Shown: piece by piece, positions 10,369 to 46,480 of the stretch | Layout of the letters: each line of letters begins with the position of its first letter | Position numbering within the stretch: position 1 is the first letter of the stretch | NCBI RefSeq assembly: GCF_000315625.1 | Contig: NW_005434648.1 | Span: forward strand, 472,974 to 536,973 | DNA length: 64,000 nt | Reading direction: 5' to 3' | From: Guillardia theta CCMP2712 | Lineage: Eukaryota > Protista > Cryptophyta | Program-made: the position numbers and the translations under genes | Notes under the pieces: generated by a model | Told to the model about the DNA's origin: nothing | The model's database searches: none | The model's input: only the letters and a program-made list of their open reading frames with translations

Positions 10369-13300
10369 TTACAACTTCACCGCGGTACCCTGTAAATGTG
10401 GTGAGAAACCAAGAATATAGCTCCGCAAGGTCACCTTGGACGCCATCGAAGGCCTCGCATGCGTTAGTTTTCTTTCCTTCGTGTTCAAACGGGCCCTGGC
10501 CTACTCCAGGTCGCAATCAGAAGATTTAAAGTGACATCGTGACACTCACCTGCTTACTCTTGGGGCTCAAATTTAGGTAAGGCTCTACCGCACAGAACAA
10601 TCCTCCTTCATCTTGCTCGTTCCCCTCAAGCTTTGCATTCAGCAACTGCTCGGAGACACGTTCGTGCGCATGTTCAACACATTCTCCATCGCTGTCATCC
10701 GCTCTTGAGCTGCTATCAATTTGTTGTGCTTGTACTTCGTCTTGAGTGTGTGATGGTCGCACAGCAAAGCACTGAGGCAAATCATAAGATCATATCAAAA
10801 TGAAAATGACAGTCATAAGTCCCGACCTGATCAGACGCCTTGCTTGTGCTCACTTCCAACTTGACATCTGCATCCTTGATCGGATCCGCGCATTTGATTT
10901 TCTCTGTAGGGCCTTCTTGGCTGGAGATTGTAGAGGTTTCAACTCTCTTTTCGTCATTTTTGGGATCCGGTTTCGCAAGTTCCAACTTGCTGATGTCTTC
11001 CCTGTGCAATGGCGTAAGCGAAGAGTATCCGTGTGTTTGTGTGTCTGAACGAAAATTTACCTCTCTGCAGCCATTTCCTTGCTTTGTACGACATGCGAGG
11101 TGATTTCCGAATGTTTTGATGCTGAATTCTCGCAAGTATCCTTCATGGATTCAGCCTTCAAAGATTCTGAAAACATCTCTGAGTGAAGGACTTGATTCTC
11201 GCCCTCATGATGATCGCTTTCGCTTACTGAATTACTGCAAAAACTTGCAAGTTTGTCGAAATCGCTGAGTTTTTTGTTATCCTTCGCCGTAGGCCTCACA
11301 GATTTTTCGATCAGCTCGTCTGCCAAGATGGAAGTCTCGCTTGGGGCTGTCGCTGAAAGAGCATTTAGCATACTTTCCAAGCGATTGATTTCTTCTGCAT
11401 GGAATCTACGAACTTTGTTCAATTCACTTCTGACAAATTCAATATGCTGAGCTTTTGTCGTGATATTTTGACCTTGCGCAAGGCTTCGAGGAACCATCAT
11501 CCTCGAGTTTTCAGAAATGTTGACAATCTTCCTTTGAATTTCATGATTGTGCGTCCTCAAGGTAATTAGATCTGTCTTTGCTTGCGAAAGTTCCGATGTA
11601 AGCTTATCAGAAGAAGCTGTCACTCTGGCGAGCTTGTTATGGTATTCATTTTGCATGCTTGAAACTTCTCCTTTGAGTGCATCAACTCTCTGAGACTGGT
11701 CGTTCATCATCTTTTCTAGGTTGCTCTCTACCTCCTTCACATGCTTCCTGGTATGTGAAAGCTCGTGATCAAACTTCAAGCATAGATCCATTGACTCCTG
11801 CAAACGCCTGGAATGATTTTCCAATGCTGCATCAAAATTTGAACGCAATTTCTGAGACTCAGTGAGAGTTGAAGAGCCCAAATCTTGCAGGTCTCTTGAA
11901 AACTTGCTCAAAGATTGTGCCATTTCTTGTTTAATATTCTCAAAGTAGGCTGTGTATTCCTCCTTGCTTCGTTTCAGGCTTTTGCTTGCTGTCTCCTCCA
12001 TCTCAGTCAAATCTTTCCTCAAAGCAGCTGCAATGCTGACAAAGCTGGTTTCACTTGCATTTCGCTCCTGAAGCACTTGAAGGTAACGATTGTGCTCTTC
12101 AACATAATTTGCTTCCAGATCTTTGATCTCTTCTACCCTCCTCTTGACTGCCTCTTCTGACTCCATCAAGCTGCGTTCCATTTTTTTCATTGTGACCTCC
12201 ATGTTTTGCACAGTCTTAATCAAGACCTTTTCAAACTCCTCCGAAGAATGATCGAACATCATCGCTGAAATGCTCGAAAGCGTTCTATAGACTAAATTGC
12301 ATAATCCTACGCACAATGCAAAAACACCGCCAACAGGTACTGTGATAGGGAGCGTGAGAATCCCAAGGCCAGTTTTGAGAACCGATAAGAAGCGCGCTGG
12401 TTTCTTGTTCACAGCTCCATCATCAGTCACGGATGCATTGCTCACAGAAGGCAGGTTCTGATTCGAACTTGCAACGAACTCAGTTTCTGCTTTATGTGAT
12501 ATTTTGGATGGATCTCTCTGCCCATTGATTTGGCTGGTTTGTTCGAGGCTTGACTCTCCCGTTGTTCCCCGCATACGAGAGAGACTTTTCTCTTTAGGCT
12601 GCTCAACATAGGAAGCGGTATGGGAAGCGGTAACTGTTTGACCACCGCACAAATCTGTTGACTGGTACATCGAAGTCTCGTACTCATATGCTTGGCTCTC
12701 AGAATCAGAATTTTCCCTTTCTGCTTGTCCAAAAGTCAGAGCATTGAACTCCAATTGATCCTTGTTCATTGGGATGTTGAGATTTCGATTGTAACCATTT
12801 TCCCATGTAAAACCAGCTGCCCCAACAATGGCAAACTTGTACTCAATATCCTGGCCTTTGGGTACCGTTGCTTCACCATGCCACCAAGGAAATTCAGCTG
12901 GAGTTGTTTCAAGCTTCAAGGCTTTTGATTTATCCCATCCTCCCATTGCGTCGGCAGCACCTAATTTCCGGGGATTCAGATTGAGCCAAGATGGTCAAGA
13001 AAATCTTACCCAAGAGGACGACTGACTCTCCTGGTTTTGTATGCTCAACCTTCACTCTGAACTTAAAGGTAGCTTGATCCGAAGAATATTGTTCACCACC
13101 ACGAATATGAAGTGCATGAAACTTTAGATCCAAGAAACATGAAGGTTAATATGATGACCAATACAAGAAGTGGAATACCTTGAAGTCGGTAGGCATGACT
13201 CTTTCAGTAGTGAGAGCATCTCGACCACAACGAGAATTTCTTTTGCATTGCTGTGCCGCCTTCGTGGTCGATATCTGCCATTTCCCTTCTGCCCCGGCAC

Positions 13301-13490
13301 GAGCAAACATGGAGGGGCGATGTCTCAGTATACTCGAAGAAGTTACGGTACATAGCCAGAGGATCGAGCCAGACTTGACAATGCTGTACTGCAAAGTATG
13401 CAAAGCTTGCGTAGATTGAGCTGTCGTAGTCAAGCCTGAAAGAAACCAGAACATAAATGCAAGCATGCAAGTCCTGGGGAAGGTCGACAT
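10369..13490 (-). CDS. Signal peptide + CBM20 starch-binding domain + hydrophobic segment + long coiled coil
   Basis: ATFKFRVKVEHTKPGESVVLLG...MGGWDKSKALKL...FPWWHGEATVP...IEYKFAIV...WENGYNR is the CBM20 pattern; LGILTLPITVPVGGVFALCVGLCNLVY is hydrophobic; ~300 aa heptad region follows; N-terminus MLAFMFWFLSGLTTTA. Confidence 0.8.
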
Positions 13491-14849
13491 GCTGGCAGTT
13501 GGGAGTTTCCGGGAGAGAAAGGTACAATCAGACCAGTGTGCTTTCAGGAGAAGGGAGAAGGAGGAGCGGAGGGAGGGGAACAGGAAGGAGGGGGGTCAGA
13601 TGAGGATGGAAAGAAGGGAAGAGGAGGAATGGCCGGAGAGATGGACGGGGAGGACACTGGAACTTCGAAGGGCAGGCGTACGGAAGGGCCGCAACTCTAG
13701 AACAGGGGGAGGGGGTAGGGATGGGGAGTGGAAATTGCGGGGTACAAGAGGGATCTTTGGGGAGGTAGGGGTGGTAAGAAAAGAGACTGATGAGACTGTT
13801 GCGTGTGTAGTATAAGGTAGGGTGGGAGAAATTTGGAATTGCAGGGATGAGTCGATCAAGTACCGGGTGAGAACCCATAGAAAAGGGGGTAAGGGTAGTC
13901 CACGGTAGCGAGTGGCAGTGAGTGCCTGGTCAGAGGTGGGGTACTTTTTATTGCGCCCCATTGGTTTTACCAGTCGAAAACAAGACTTTTCACAGTTAAG
14001 GTCTTAGGCGATTTCATAGGAAAATTTGACGGCCTCTAGTGTTGATAAGACCAAAAATAAATTGCTGTAGACCTCTGGTAGTAATGCTAGGACCGTCATA
14101 AGGATTTCCTACCCCACAACATTGGCATCACGGGCCGCGCTAGCACGCCTCCTCGTTCAACACGCCCAGAGGACATCAAATTTGAAACTTGAAAACCTTA
14201 AGGCAGCTGAGGGGGGCTTGCTACCTCGAAAGTTGAGTGATGTTTAGCTTGAAAGTCACATGTTCGAGTGCTCTCGTTCAGTAGTAGCTCGGAACTTCAA
14301 ACTTGCCGCAAGTTGAATCTGGCCTGGCCCAGTGGGCCGGAGGTTCCGGGCCGGTCGGAGTCGTACGAGTACGGTCGCCGGGACAATTTTCGAGATGACG
14401 CATTTGACTTCGAGTAAAATTGCCGCAGGGGCGATCAATGATTGAAACCGACTTCAAGTTAGTAATAGTAACTTTGAAACTTGAAAGCCTTTCCGGGGCT
14501 CGCCGCCGCGCCAGTGTCACCTCTGGCGCGCCGCCGGGCCGGGCCCACCCGGCGGCCGGGGTCCGGGAGGCGCCAGGATTTCGCAAAGCGACCGAACAAA
14601 TGGAGGAGATGGAGGAGGTAGCAGGACAGTGAGGTTAGCAAGGGACAGGCAGTGAGAGAGGAGCCGCATCATGCTGAGAGGAGAGAGGAGAGAGCTCTAG
14701 GTGAAGAGTCTCGTTGAGAGGAAGAGGAGAATGCTTCTGAGGACATCCTTGAATAATGAACTCGGCATCGATTCCAGCATGAATTTGCCATCATGAAGAG
14801 ATTTGTAGTGACCTGATTTGCCAAGAAGGGACATCGCACTAGCAGTCAC

Positions 14850-17800
14850 ATGGAAAAGTGGAGGATGAAGATATGCAGGTCGACGTCGAACTTGTGCGCC
14901 GCCATATTCATGTTGTCTCAACTGCAATGCTGCGCAAACATTGCCAGAGGTGAAGGAGCTCGCCAATTATTTGCAGCATTGCTGCACGAGCTCAAGGCGG
15001 GTAATTCCGACTGTACATCACGTTTGGTCCTTCGGGGAGGATCTTCGAATGTTATGTTTAATGCTCATGGGAACAAAAAGTACAAGATCGAACTCACTGA
15101 TCAAGATGCTCTCAATCTTATGAATGATGTATCCGAGGAAGAATCGTTTGGATACTCGTCGCAATTCGAACCAGGCAATTTCAATGAAACCCAGAGGAAA
15201 GAGCTGGAAGGAAAGATAAACACCTTGCTAGAACGTAGCCTCTGATTGTATCATCAATTTGATGAATTCTGATACATGTCTGCTAGAAAACGCCACAGTG
15301 GAGCAGGTAGAAAACTTCCTGAATCATGCTATCGGTATGTCTTGAACAGAAGTCGAAGGGTTCTGAGGATTTGACCACAGAAACCTATGGAGAAGAAGAG
15401 GTAGACAATGCTGACATAGATGAGTATGGCCCTCATGTATGGTATGGCGACGATTATTGGAAGGTGATGCGGTGCGGCAAGCAAAATTGTCTTCTGAATC
15501 TGTTCAGATCGGAGACTTGGCGTGGTGGGATATTCCGTGGATTCAAAGACCACTGATCGGTGTTGAAACGTTGATCATGCTCCCATCAGGAGCTGATGTA
15601 TCTTTGTTGTTAACCAACAGGGCAGCTGGTATTGGACGATGGAACGAGCATCGACCTCAGGTTAGGAGGCAGGAGCGTTTGTTCCAGATCCATGAGATGG
15701 TGTCGATCAGGGAAGGAGATCTCCCCAACAGAAATCCTTACAATCCGGACCCTTCCTTGTTCGCAAAGAAAGGTGCCTCAATGTGGCACGCTGTTGTGTT
15801 TGCTCATGAAGAGACTTGAAGCTCCGAGGACGAAGCGACCAAAGGCGAATGTGACGAAACAAGATGTTGCTGGTATGCTTGCTCTATCTTGAAGAGACTC
15901 TCATCCTTCGTCTTCCTCTCGCATTCTAACTTTCTTCTCCCTGAATGTTCTCACAGACTTCTGGCACAACTTCACTGTGGTATGCGTAAAATTCAATCTT
16001 TTGTTCATTCCCCCCTCCGTCCATCCCTCATGCCGCATTTTCGTCCCCTCCCTCCGATCTTGAATATTCATTTGATCGAGAGGCCATCAGAGCATCCAGA
16101 AAAGAGACAGATCCTCCCTGTTGGATGCGCCGGAAGATGATTACGATACCTGGGTGAGAAGCGAAGAAACACCTGTAAATTGCGTCTCAGTTTGCTCACA
16201 CTCTGCATGTACAGGTTGCAACCTTCGACAAAATGTTGGACCGGAAGATTCGATGGGAGAGGTTTTCCTATTCCACCGAATGTGTCACATTTCGCGTCAT
16301 CTTTGCTTCGCAGGAAAACTCCACAAGCTTCCGACACGAATGCAACGGAGAGACAACTACTTGTAAGAAAGAGAGACTCCTGCTCCTGTTTGATTGAAAA
16401 AGAGGAGCACGTCTTGTAATGGTCTCTGGGCTGAATATTCTTCTTAGACTTCCAGTTACGAGACTACTTCAGGCATATACGACCAAATTCGAAACTGGTT
16501 GGAATCTTGATTCGCAACATTCTTTGACTCTCATCATGTTCCTATTAGTGTGATCGAACGATACGGTCGAGCGTCCGTTCCACTCGTTGGTGAAGCTGAG
16601 ATGTTGAAGTACGACAGACAAAGTTGACTCTCTTGACAGCAAAGATGGACTGGATTGTCAATTACTCAGGGACTGTCCCGATGCCAGAACCTGTGAGGCT
16701 GAGAGAGGTCAGAACCGAAGTTCTCACAGCCTTGTTGCAGAAACCTCTCGTGAAAGGAGAGATGGCGACGAGATACAACTGCTTTGTGAACATGATACTA
16801 CGTTCATCTTTCCACGTTGACAAGGAAGGCAGGGAGAGTTTGAGGACATCACTCCGTACATGCCGGACGAAGTTGATGCTGTACTGGATGACTTGTCTGT
16901 CGACGAGATGCACAAGATGCTATGGGAGGTGAGAAAGATGAGGGGTGGAGGATGTCGACTGCGATTGCCGACGGGACCAGCAATGGTGGTGAATTTGTGA
17001 GAGTATTGATTAACCCGTTTGGTTTTCAGTTTTCCAAGTTTGGTAGAGTGAAGAGTATCGCTACACTTTGCGAGGTCTTTTCTTTGAAATCTAACATATC
17101 CATTCCTCACTTGTGACTTTCGTCATGGTTTCACCTTCCAATCTTCCTTCCCCTCTTGTTCTGTTCACTCACACTATCGTCACAGGCAGGGGCCGATCCG
17201 AACGCTGTCAACGAATTCAGCTGCACAGCAATGCACTATGCTGCAAGAGAGGGATGGAGTCCGGTATAGCTCTCATTTGCATGTCTCGCCTGTTCCAAAT
17301 TCTCCTCCTTCCCCCTCCCCCCCGCTCCTCTTTCCCCTCCCGCTGCTCCCCCTTCTTCTACCATACCCACAACCAATCCCTCCTCATCGTTGCTGATTCC
17401 ACACGAAGACGATTGAGGTTCTCTACAAGTTCGGAGGAGACTTGAATGTCAAGAATGAGATTGGTGGGTTTTGGAGAATAATCACTCACACGATTGATCG
17501 TCATGACAGAAATGACTCCCTTGCATTATGCTGCGTACAACAATCGCACAGCTGCTGTGTGGGCACTTCTAAGGTACTCTCCCATCATCATCGTTCATTC
17601 TTCCTTCCTCAGTCCGCACCTCCCAATGCTACTTCTCCTCTCGTTTTCATCTGTTTCCTCCTCCTTACATCATCGAGAATCAACTCCGACAAACTCTCTT
17701 TCCCTCGTTCAAGGTGTGGAGCGGAGATTTCTGTTCGAAACTACTTCAACTTCACGGCATTGGAGCTTGCAAGCATCCATAACTTCAAGCAGATCGTGTC

Positions 17801-45109: not shown

Positions 45110-45972
45110 GATCTCGTCACAGCATCAGCGTGTGCAGTCTTGATCTTGTCATGATGCCTCTCTCCCTCCTCTTCCTCCTCCTTCCAACGTTCCCCGCTCT
45201 CCCGCCATTCCCCTCCCGCCTTCGGATCTTCTTGGTCTGAGTCTGCCTCAGAGTATAAACTGAGGACCACGGCCCCGGCCCGGGCCCACCAACTGACTGA
45301 GTCCATACTATGATGGGCGACCTCTGCCACCTCCCTGGCCTTTCCGGAGTCCACCCTCAAGCATAGGGCCTCACGTGAGAGCCTCGGTAGGGCTGAATCC
45401 TTTACTACGAGGACAACCAGGAGACTCGTTCGAGGAGGCTTGACCGTCCCTGACACTGTCGCACACTGGCCAGGACCAGCTGAATCAGGCTGGCGGATTC
45501 AACATCACTGAGTCACTTCAGAGCGCCGGGACTGAAAGGTTCAACGGTTCAACGGTTCCGAAGTTCCGGGCCAGATCAACCTCCGAGGCTCCGAGGAGGT
45601 CCTGCGACGGGAGTCACGTGAGCTGAGCAGGGTAATTTTGCTTAGCTGGGTCACGGCCGTAGCCTTGTAAGATGCCTCGCTGTAATTTAACTTAACTTTG
45701 AGTAAATGCTGAATCTGGAGGATCGTTGACAGGCGCAAAGCGGCGCTGCCGTCGGATTTAGTTAACATTCATCGAGCTGGATATGTAGTACCGATAAATG
45801 TTTACTCAATGTACTAGCTGGTACTCAGCACAAAGCGCAAACAAGTAGACCTACACACCCACCCTGGGAAAACGATCAAAGTTGATGATGTTGAGGGGGT
45901 GGGGGTTGTTGAGGGACGAGGCCAACAAAAAGTACCAGTGCCTCTGCGTGACCAAGAAAGACACAGAAATCC

Positions 45973-46074
<102 letters not shown>

Positions 46075-46480
46075 GCTCCTCGTGCTCCTCGTGCTCTTCT
46101 CACTCCTCCTCTGAGGCTCCTCCCGCTTCTCTCCTCTCCCCTCCCCTTCTCGCCCTCCTCTCCTCTCCCCTCCCTCCTCTCCTTCCTCTCCTCTCCCTCC
46201 TTCACACCCTGGCCACTGCTCCTCTCCTTTTCATCCTCCTCTCCGTGTTGTCTACTCTTCCTCGTGCTTCCCTCCATTTCATGGTTGTCCGTGCTCTTGC
46301 CGTCTTCATCCTCGACTCATTCCCTCAATCTTCGCTTAACATTCTACCTTCCTGTCCTTATCATCCTCGGACCAACAGCTATTTCCATGTACGATCATAG
46401 ACGTAGACTTGTATCAGAGCACCAGGAGAGAGAAGTGTGTGTGTTGATAGTGTTTCACCAAGAACTTTGTTACCTTCTGA

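What the first reader, a model, noticed from the sequence alone, without database searches (positions are those of the whole stretch)
13095..15041. Ubiquitin-tail-like (L/I)RGG motifs at the end of leaders in two neighbouring signal-peptide genes
Seen: the CBM20 gene has ALHIRGG (IRGG at 13095-13106) about 7 aa before the CBM20 domain. The divergent ankyrin gene has RLVLRGG (15021-15041) about 35 aa after its signal peptide. Neither leader shows the Phe seen in the four stromal-type leaders here, and I did not see RGG in those. Known: LRLRGG is the ubiquitin C-terminus cleaved by deubiquitinases, and SELMA import into the periplastid compartment uses ubiquitin machinery. Inference: RGG may be a DUB-type maturation site or sorting signal for periplastid/ER cargo. 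Only two examples, and it may already be described.
Basis: inference. Interest (0 to 1): 0.7.

Follow-up and report, generated by a model that had tools for sequence, protein, structure and literature searches.

The report
Ubiquitin-tail motif ends periplastid import leaders
Two neighbouring genes of the alga Guillardia theta end their import leaders with a sequence resembling the last six residues of ubiquitin. My genome-wide counts suggest this is a recurrent, apparently undescribed mark, probably the point where proteins sent to the remnant cytoplasm around the plastid are trimmed.

Summary
**Observation: confirmed.**
- IRGG lies at 13095-13106 (-), and RLVLRGG at 15021-15041 (+).
- Both follow a signal-peptide-like start.
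- Both fit the longer ubiquitin-tail form L-x-[LI]-R-G-G (LHIRGG, LVLRGG).
- Hanusia phi orthologues keep both motifs. The ankyrin orthologue reads LRLRGG exactly.
- Neither leader shows a ubiquitin fold.

**Evidence for a wider class, from my own genome-wide DNA-pattern tests in G. theta.**
- I estimate about 258 true LRLRGG-coding sites, against about 62-67 for permuted controls. Only about 16 are ubiquitin genes.
- Hydrophobic runs lie upstream of the motif more often than downstream (25 vs 10 sites).
- 19 of 20 decoded sites sit in open, Ser/Arg/Ala-rich frames.
- In an EF-1alpha gene, LRLRGG is followed directly by GKEK, the canonical mature N-terminus.

**Reading.** The two motifs are most likely degenerate members of a recurrent leader-end signal for periplastid cargo, probably a cut site after GG.

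**Not shown.** Cleavage, the enzyme (a deubiquitinase is only inferred) and periplastid location are all untested.

**Prior work.** The scan had already found this motif on other DNA of this genome (s1-446793, s1-434682, s1-430510, s1-430677). I tested those leads independently. I found no paper describing it in the held library.

**Limits.** Gene models were searched exon by exon, and no joined sequence was used.

The parts
13413..13490 (-). CBM20 gene, exon 1 start: signal peptide MSTFPRTCMLAFMFWFLSGLTTTAQS (about 26 aa)
   Evidence: Hydrophobic h-region (mean Kyte-Doolittle 2.3). AQS|T fits the -3/-1 rule by eye. Conserved in Hanusia P0002.
13179..13412 (-). CBM20 gene, rest of exon 1: basic, Ser/Thr-rich transit-peptide-like leader (net charge about +9 up to the motif)
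   Evidence: Read. 77% identical to Hanusia. No Pfam or ubiquitin similarity.
13122..13178 (-). Intron 1 of the CBM20 gene (57 nt, GT-AG)
   Evidence: The Hanusia transcript runs ...PTDFK|MHALHIRGG without a break.
13095..13112 (-). Leader-end motif LHIRGG (ubiquitin positions 71-76: L-x-I-R-G-G)
   Evidence: Identical in Hanusia (HALHIRGGEQ). 6-7 residues before CBM_20.
12755..13073 (-). CBM20 starch-binding domain (split by intron 12961-13009)
   Evidence: Pfam PF00686: E 4.7e-11 on exon 3; E 6e-18 on Hanusia residues 124-209.
13491..14849 (.). Intergenic region shared by the two divergent genes (1.36 kb), a putative bidirectional promoter
   Evidence: Positions of the two start codons. Function is inferred only.
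14865..14945 (+). Ankyrin gene, exon 1 start: signal peptide MKICRSTSNLCAAIFMLSQLQCCANIA (an upstream in-frame ATG lies at 14850)
   Evidence: h-region score 2.46. ENA relative P0003 and Hanusia P0004 begin near here.
14946..15023 (+). Ankyrin gene: short leader RGEGARQLFAALLHELKAGNSDCTSR (net charge about +2)
   Evidence: Partly conserved in Hanusia (ARGxGA, LLHxLKxG, CT).
15024..15041 (+). Leader-end motif LVLRGG
   Evidence: LVLRGG in the ENA relatives. LRLRGG, the exact ubiquitin tail, in Hanusia P0004. hhalign aligns only this stretch to the ubiquitin tail.
15042..15234 (+). Ankyrin gene, rest of exon 1: acidic conserved start of the presumed mature protein (YKIELTDQ..., EESFGYSS)
   Evidence: Net charge changes from positive to negative at the motif (read from the sequence).
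15287..15334 (+). Ankyrin gene exon 2 (QNATVEQVENFLNHAI)
   Evidence: Colinear with Hanusia P0004, ILDQNASVEQVEDVLNHAIG.

Best explanation
Both genes encode preproteins for the periplastid compartment of Guillardia theta. Each starts with an ER signal peptide followed by a transit-peptide-like stretch without an aromatic first residue. That stretch ends in L-x-[LI]-R-G-G, a mimic of ubiquitin residues 71-76.

These are degenerate copies of a leader end, canonically LRLRGG, that occurs at roughly 200 non-ubiquitin sites in this genome.

The most likely function is a processing site. After SELMA-dependent passage of the periplastid membrane, a periplastid peptidase that reads a ubiquitin-like tail cuts after Gly-Gly. 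That peptidase may be a deubiquitinase-type or ULP/adenain-type cysteine peptidase. The cut would free the mature protein: EQYSSDQ-CBM20 in one gene and SSNVMF... in the other.

Shown here: the presence of the motif, its conservation, its recurrence, its position after hydrophobic N-termini, and its exact junction with a native N-terminus in EF-1alpha.

Inferred: periplastid location, the cleavage itself, and the enzyme class.
For: 1. Motifs and gene models.
2. Orthologues: Hanusia phi keeps HALHIRGGEQ. It has LRLRGG where G. theta has LVLRGG, in a region only 48-51% identical.
3. Genome-wide LRLRGG-type pattern:
   - 353 hits, against 140 (RLRLGG order) and 194 (LRLRAA).
   - In the listed rows, 73 of 100 use true Leu/Arg codons. 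Random expectation is 32%, and the controls gave 16/50 and 24/50.
   - Binomial p = 3e-17; Fisher p = 4e-6; estimated excess about 200 sites (codon counts made by hand from the listings).
4. Ubiquitin genes explain only about 16 sites. None of the first 100 sites lies at a Pfam ubiquitin hit.
5. Six-codon hydrophobic runs lie 45-106 nt upstream at 25 distinct sites, against 10 downstream (p = 0.008).
6. 19 of 20 sites have no in-frame stop in the 21 preceding codons (p = 6e-8). They decode to Ser/Arg/Ala-rich stretches.
7. Variants LMLRGG, LALRGG, LSLRGG and LKLRGG occur in similar contexts, so position x is free.
8. EF-1alpha: the only genome hit decodes to LRLRGG|GKEKHHCSIVVIGHVDSGK. The leader therefore ends exactly where canonical EF-1alpha begins after Met removal (that N-terminus is textbook knowledge).
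9. Net charge changes from positive to neutral or negative at the motif in both genes (read from the sequence).
Against: - Neither G. theta gene carries the canonical hexapeptide.
- LxLRGG sites with x other than R show at most a weak genome-wide excess (44/80 true codons against 42% expected, p = 0.014). Their rate of upstream hydrophobic runs is at control level. Membership of these two variants therefore rests mainly on the Hanusia LRLRGG and on position.
- Both leaders are conserved almost as well as the mature parts (77% vs 86-88% for the CBM20 gene). Conservation of the motif alone is therefore not discriminating, and the 'leader' could be part of the mature protein.
- Classical DUBs need the ubiquitin fold, which is absent.
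- No signal-peptide predictor was available. The Phe versus non-Phe split is untested.
- Only G. theta and its close relative Hanusia could be compared.
Confidence: 0.55

Rival explanations
1. The motif is real and recurrent, but it acts as a recognition, sorting or retention signal and is not a cut site. For example, a ubiquitin-tail mimic could be bound by ubiquitin-handling parts of SELMA (Cdc48-Ufd1-Npl4, the E3, the DUB). Or it could mark cargo that stays in the periplastid compartment and does not go on to Toc/Tic.
For: The evidence of recurrence is the same as for the best explanation. SELMA uses ubiquitin machinery (PMC5756292; PMC12412216). Both leaders here are conserved like functional protein segments.
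Against: The EF-1alpha junction places the motif exactly in front of the native N-terminus, and the CBM20 motif sits 6-7 residues before the domain. A cut site explains this more simply. A binding signal has no need to sit at the very end of the leader.
Confidence: 0.17
2. In one or both of these two genes the motif is a coincidence. A short Arg-Gly-Gly string sits in a conserved N-terminal region and was picked post hoc. The recurrent LRLRGG class exists, but these genes are not members.
For: - The forms are non-canonical (LHIRGG, LVLRGG).
- Non-R variants are barely enriched genome-wide.
- The whole N-terminal regions are conserved, so the motif does not stand out.
- The CBM20 leader is long (about 85 aa), has three Cys and a faint Kazal-like hit (E 0.07), and could be a folded lumenal segment.
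Against: - Hanusia has exact LRLRGG at the homologous position of the ankyrin gene.
- Both motifs match ubiquitin at four of its six tail positions (71, 74, 75 and 76), with Leu or Ile at position 73, not only at RGG.
- Both sit after a signal peptide and at the switch in charge or domain.
- The composition-only expectation is under 1e-4 per leader for L-x-[LI]-RGG.
- Variants with other residues at x occur in leader-like contexts.
Confidence: 0.22
3. The leaders are decayed ubiquitin or ubiquitin-like domains fused behind a signal peptide (as in the apicoplast protein PUBL). Only the tail is still recognisable, so they would be true linear ubiquitin fusions cut by ordinary DUBs.
For: The CBM20 leader is about 85 residues, close to the 76 of ubiquitin. 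PUBL shows that plastid-targeted ubiquitin derivatives exist (PMC5487736, listed).
Against: - No Pfam ubiquitin hit on the leaders or at this locus.
- hhalign aligns only the tail (probability 0.4% and 3%).
- The ankyrin leader is only about 32 residues.
- Decoded leaders elsewhere are 10-25 residue Ser/Arg-rich stretches.
- The AlphaFold2 model is uninformative (pLDDT 37).
Confidence: 0.03

Closest known systems
Linear ubiquitin-fusion precursors (polyubiquitin, Ub-ribosomal protein fusions) cut after LRLRGG by deubiquitinases
   Same: The same hexapeptide, or a close variant, sits directly in front of the N-terminus of the downstream protein. In EF-1alpha the junction is exact.
   Different: There is no ubiquitin fold in front of the tail. 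The upstream part is a signal peptide plus a transit-peptide-like stretch. The enzyme is unknown.
Bipartite targeting signals of periplastid proteins in cryptophytes and diatoms (signal peptide plus transit-peptide-like part without aromatic +1; the 'TPL peptidase' postulated in PMC5756292)
   Same: The architecture and the inferred destination match, and removal of the leader in the periplastid compartment is postulated.
   Different: The held literature names no cleavage motif or enzyme for these leaders. Here a defined end motif is proposed.
Stromal transit-peptide cleavage motif of diatoms (Ala/Ser at -3, Leu at -2; Huesgen et al. 2013, PMC3774753)
   Same: It is a loosely conserved end of a transit peptide, with Leu close to the cut and an acidic mature start.
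   Different: The motif differs, the compartment differs (stroma) and the enzyme is known (stromal processing peptidase). RGG is not part of it.
Double-glycine leader peptides of bacteriocins and quorum peptides, cut by C39 peptidase domains of ABC exporters. Also viral LXGG (coronavirus PLpro) and (M/L/I)XGG (adenain) sites. All from my own knowledge.
   Same: A linear leader or junction ending in Gly-Gly with Leu/Ile at P4 is cut by a papain-like cysteine peptidase. For bacteriocins the cut is coupled to transport. This shows that short GG motifs can be cut without a ubiquitin fold.
   Different: The organisms and machineries are unrelated. No homology is claimed. The consensus upstream of GG differs.
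PUBL, the plastid ubiquitin-like protein of Toxoplasma (PMC5487736)
   Same: It is a ubiquitin-derived sequence with a diglycine end working in ERAD-derived plastid import.
   Different: PUBL is a folded ubiquitin-like protein acting as a modifier. Here only the tail is present, built into the cargo's own leader.

Membership tests
Periplastid-type bipartite targeting signal (cryptophyte) | N-terminal ER signal peptide with a hydrophobic h-region | tested here: met
   Simple hydropathy scan: 9-residue windows score 2.3 (CBM20 gene) and 2.46 (ankyrin gene), with no charged residues. No dedicated predictor was available.
Periplastid-type bipartite targeting signal (cryptophyte) | First residue after the signal-peptide cut is not aromatic (not F/Y/W/L) | tested here: inconclusive
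   By the -3/-1 rule read by eye: AQS|T or TTA|Q for the CBM20 gene; CCA|N or NIA|R for the ankyrin gene. None is aromatic, but the cut site is not predicted by a trained tool.
Periplastid-type bipartite targeting signal (cryptophyte) | Transit-peptide-like part: net positive, hydroxylated, few acidic residues | tested here: met
   CBM20 leader: 13 K/R against 4 D/E, many S/T. Ankyrin leader: weaker (5 against 3). Counted from the sequences.
Periplastid-type bipartite targeting signal (cryptophyte) | Experimental localisation in the periplastid compartment | not testable with these tools
   Needs GFP fusions or immuno-EM.
Recurrent LRLRGG leader end of G. theta | Hexapeptide L-R-L-R-G-G | tested here: not met
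   G. theta has LHIRGG and LVLRGG. Hanusia has LRLRGG in the ankyrin orthologue. Variants at position 2 occur elsewhere in leader-like contexts.
Recurrent LRLRGG leader end of G. theta | Lies downstream of a hydrophobic N-terminal run, in an open frame with transit-peptide-like composition | tested here: met
   Both genes. For the class.
Recurrent LRLRGG leader end of G. theta | Directly precedes the conserved mature part | tested here: met
   6-7 residues before CBM_20. Charge switch and conserved acidic block after the ankyrin motif. Exact junction in EF-1alpha.
Ubiquitin / ubiquitin-like domain (PF00240) | Beta-grasp domain detectable by profile | tested here: not met
   No hit on the leaders. 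None of 77 genome hits lies at this locus. hhalign aligns only the tail.
Deubiquitinase substrate | Cut after Gly76-equivalent by a DUB | not testable with these tools
   Needs N-terminomics or in vitro cleavage.
Double-glycine leader (bacteriocin type) | Consensus LSxxELxxIxGG and a dedicated C39 peptidase-ABC exporter | tested here: not met
   The upstream consensus is absent from both leaders (read from the sequence). The resemblance is functional only. I did not search for a C39 peptidase.

The most novel reading that the evidence does not exclude
Periplastid cargo in cryptophytes carries a built-in ubiquitin C-terminus at the end of its leader. The SELMA-associated deubiquitinase, or another periplastid peptidase with ubiquitin-tail specificity, would then remove the presequence in the same act as, or in place of, deubiquitination. 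An organelle presequence peptidase would thus be a DUB-type enzyme reading a six-residue mimic without the ubiquitin fold. The motif would also define the periplastid proteome.
Probability: 0.3. Interest if true: 0.9.

Novelty: new variant of a known kind. Interest (0 to 1): 0.7.

Why it matters
How periplastid-resident proteins lose their leader is an open point of the SELMA import model. The literature I could read speaks only of an unidentified 'TPL peptidase', with no known site.

A defined ubiquitin-tail-like end would have three consequences:
- It gives a directly testable cut site, through N-terminomics and GG-to-AA reporters.
- It gives a sequence handle for finding the enzyme.
- It gives a new criterion for predicting periplastid proteomes, which today rests mainly on the absence of one aromatic residue.

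It would also tie presequence removal to the ubiquitin machinery from which SELMA evolved.

For annotation, it flags N-terminally truncated models such as GUITHDRAFT_137576.

Tried and rejected
- **Ubiquitin-fold relic.** Pfam on the leaders, a genome scan with PF00240 and hhalign against a G. theta ubiquitin alignment found only the tail. Rejected.
- **Structure and feature searches.** AlphaFold2 on the Hanusia N-terminus with the G. theta exons as rows gave pLDDT 37; even the CBM20 domain was not modelled. The ESM Atlas feature search was blank. Both are uninformative.
- **More distant orthologues.**
  - The word search with the 629-aa exon and with Hanusia residues 1-215 found only G. theta and Hanusia.
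  - The exhaustive representative search with ankyrin exon 1 found only two true clusters.
  - There are no paralogues in the genome.
- **Proteome-like sampling of the genome.** I asked for no further loci and used only pattern counts and the matched strings that the pattern tool prints.
- **The look-up of encoding contigs for P0001.** Not on record.
- **Diatom N-terminomics supplement (PMC3774753).** It lists peptides without preceding residues, so it gives no test.
- **Blind junction patterns.** RGG plus starch-synthase KTGGLGDV, and RGG plus histone H2A GLQFPVG, gave no hit. Uninformative.
- **+45428 RRLVRGG in the window.** There is no start or signal peptide upstream, so this is probably a non-coding frame.
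- **Spliced models.** They were searched exon by exon by reference.

Full report
**What the window is.** The window is G000:C26:472974-536973 of an 87.1-Mb genome. Its CBM20 gene is GUITHDRAFT_137576 of Guillardia theta CCMP2712. The finding concerns two divergently transcribed genes whose start codons lie 1.36 kb apart.

**Observation.**
- 13095-13106 (-) reads IRGG, within FHALHIRGGEQYSSDQ|ATFKF.
- 15021-15041 (+) reads RLVLRGG.

**CBM20 gene model.**
- Exon 1 is 13179-13490 (signal peptide MSTFPRTCMLAFMFWFLSGLTTTAQS plus 78 further residues).
- A 57-nt intron follows, then exon 2 (13010-13121), a 49-nt intron, and then the long exon that starts the deposited model.
- That deposited model (P0001) begins at MGGWDK inside the CBM20 domain.
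- The Hanusia phi transcript P0002 (856 aa) shows the full N-terminus, colinear with my three exons.
- Pfam places CBM_20 from Hanusia residue 124 at profile position 5, and GG is residues 112-113. That is 6-7 residues in between.

**Ankyrin gene model.**
- Exon 1 is 14850/14865-15234 and exon 2 is 15287-15334.
- Both are supported by Hanusia P0004. That transcript has spliced intron 1 and retained intron 2.
- I searched all models exon by exon by reference and did not build a joined protein.

- LHIRGG and LVLRGG, against LRLRGG in ubiquitin.
- The Hanusia orthologue of the ankyrin gene is only 48-51% identical over exon 1. It reads LRLRGG, the exact ubiquitin tail.
- Hanusia keeps HALHIRGGEQ in the CBM20 gene.
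- Conservation alone is weak evidence. The CBM20 leader is 77% identical against 86-88% for the domain, and only this one close relative could be found.

**Not a ubiquitin relic.**
- Pfam finds nothing on the leaders.
- None of the 77 PF00240 hits in the genome lies at this locus.
- Profile-profile comparison with a G. theta ubiquitin alignment aligns only the tail (probability 0.4% and 3%).
- AlphaFold2 and the Atlas were uninformative.

**Earlier notes of the scan.** A word search of the scan's notes showed that other readers and two follow-ups had reported the same ubiquitin-tail motif at leader ends on other DNA of this genome. The notes are s1-430510, s1-446793, s1-430677 and s1-434682. 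I treated these as leads and tested them.

**Test 1: is LRLRGG over-represented?**

| Pattern | Codes for | Hits | True Leu/Arg codons in listed rows |
|---|---|---|---|
| YTN MGN YTN MGN GGN GGN | LRLRGG (also admits Phe and Ser) | 353 | 73 of 100 |
| Same codons, other order | RLRLGG | 140 | 24 of 50 |
| Gly-Gly replaced by Ala-Ala | LRLRAA | 194 | 16 of 50 |

- The random expectation for true Leu/Arg codons is 0.75^4 = 32%. I counted the codons by hand from the listings.
- This gives about 258 true LRLRGG sites against about 62-67 in the controls.
- It is an excess of about 200 sites (binomial p = 3e-17; Fisher p = 4e-6).
- Canonical ubiquitin tails number about 16.
- None of the first 100 sites coincides with a Pfam ubiquitin hit.
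- Codon choice differs from site to site, so the signal is at protein level and is not a DNA repeat.

**Test 2: are the sites at leader ends?**
- I required a run of six codons with T at the second position (hydrophobic residues) 45-106 nt from the motif.
- This found 25 distinct sites with the run upstream and 10 with it downstream (p = 0.008).
- In one search the printed 63 nt before the motif do not include the selected run.
  - There, 19 of 20 sites have no in-frame stop in 21 codons (expected 36%; p = 6e-8).
  - They decode to Ser/Arg/Ala/Pro-rich stretches. Examples are ...GASSLQMKPSSRSSCSRSSSI-LRLRGG and ...FHARSPFHARAHSAQRSAGRY-LRLRGG.
- In one search several sites show the end of an h-region. 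An example is GALLLPACCLNA|RPLLVPSSA-LRLRGG.
- With any residue at position 2, the bulk of hits is background.
- Even so, LMLRGG, LALRGG, LSLRGG and LKLRGG occur in the same kind of context. LVLRGG in the ankyrin gene therefore fits the class.

**Test 3: a junction with a known N-terminus.**
- I used a pattern for RLRGG followed within 16-46 nt by the EF-1alpha P-loop.
- It has a single hit in the genome.
- Together with the row, it decodes to LRLRGG|GKEKHHCSIVVIGHVDSGK.
- Canonical EF-1alpha starts MGKEK. The leader therefore replaces the initiator Met, and a cut after GG would recreate the native N-terminus.
- This confirms note s1-434682 by my own test. It is the best argument that the motif is a cut site and not merely a binding signal.
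- Two similar blind patterns (starch synthase, histone H2A) found nothing and say nothing.

**Interpretation.**
- Both genes have a signal-peptide-like start, a non-aromatic residue after either plausible cut, and a basic leader (net charge about +9 and +2). Net charge changes to neutral or negative at the motif.
- Their domains belong in a cytosol-like space. Cryptophyte starch lies in the periplastid compartment (established knowledge), and ankyrin repeats are cytosolic modules.
- The most likely reading is that they are periplastid cargo whose leader ends in a degenerate ubiquitin-tail mimic, which marks the processing site.
- Which enzyme cuts is open. Classical DUBs need the ubiquitin body.
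- Papain-like peptidases that cut linear (L/I/M)XGG sites do exist (adenain, coronavirus PLpro, bacteriocin C39 domains; my own knowledge). A periplastid DUB or ULP-type enzyme is therefore plausible but unproven.
- Rivals are a sorting or retention signal, coincidence in one or both of these non-canonical cases, and a decayed ubiquitin fusion.

**Literature.**
- No paper in the held library combines LRLRGG with cryptophyte, periplastid, nucleomorph or Guillardia.
- ASAFind 2.0 describes only the region around the signal-peptide cut.
- Cavalier-Smith 2017 postulates an unidentified 'TPL peptidase' and names no site.
- Huesgen 2013 gives a different motif for stromal transit peptides.
- Many subscription-journal papers are not held, so prior description cannot be excluded.

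**Limits.**
- No RNA reads.
- No signal-peptide predictor.
- No proteome-wide split by the +1 residue.
- Purity and distinct-site counts were made by hand from tool listings, and only the first 100 rows of the large searches are visible.

**Verdict.** The motifs are probably two more, degenerate, members of an apparently undescribed leader-end signal that the scan had already met elsewhere in this genome.

Noticed in passing
window 12947-13490 (-): The deposited gene model GUITHDRAFT_137576 starts at MGGWDK inside the CBM20 domain. It lacks two upstream exons that encode the signal peptide, the leader and the first strands of the domain. The Hanusia phi transcript P0002 shows the full N-terminus.
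   Followed up: yes
G000:C3:1065226-1065300 (-) (outside the window): An EF-1alpha gene whose leader ends LRLRGG directly in front of GKEKHHCSIVVIGHVDSGK, that is, at the canonical N-terminus. This suggests a periplastid copy of a cytosolic-type elongation factor.
   Followed up: partly
L019:1-284 (-) (G000:C11, about 1053420-1053703): An example held by chance: the ORF MKLNRVIANVLLKVFVILLHTDPSLPVHSPARCARYSLIRLRGGAVTRM..., with a hydrophobic start, a short basic stretch, then IRLRGG. It is cut by the end of the locus, so the gene is unknown.
   Followed up: no
window 13491-14849: The two RGG-leader genes are divergent neighbours sharing 1.36 kb, as in another locus noted by the scan (s1-446793). 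Among the listed LRLRGG sites, C18:773674 (-) and C18:775174 (+) carry the same 17-mer 1.5 kb apart in divergent orientation. Six site pairs lie within 10 kb against about 4 expected, which is not significant.
   Followed up: partly
L033:1-860 and L033:861-2774; L034: Two ENA metagenome contigs (PRJEB17505) are about 95% identical in DNA to window 14580-16506, introns included, and keep LVLRGG. The first 860 nt of L033 do not align to the window, so the intergenic region differs in that close relative.
   Followed up: partly
G000:C100:191965 and C100:199476 (+): Two near-identical leader ends (...KCCRVDEHVYSA-LRLRGG) lie 7.5 kb apart. They are probably tandem paralogues.
   Followed up: no
G000:C34:46492 (-): A leader-like open frame ends in LALRGG, which is the NEDD8 tail and not the ubiquitin tail.
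   Followed up: no
window 45876-46400: A long GCN/CTG-type simple repeat (poly-Ala in one frame, poly-Leu or poly-Cys in others) lies between the RecQ-like helicase gene and the THI4-like gene.
   Followed up: no
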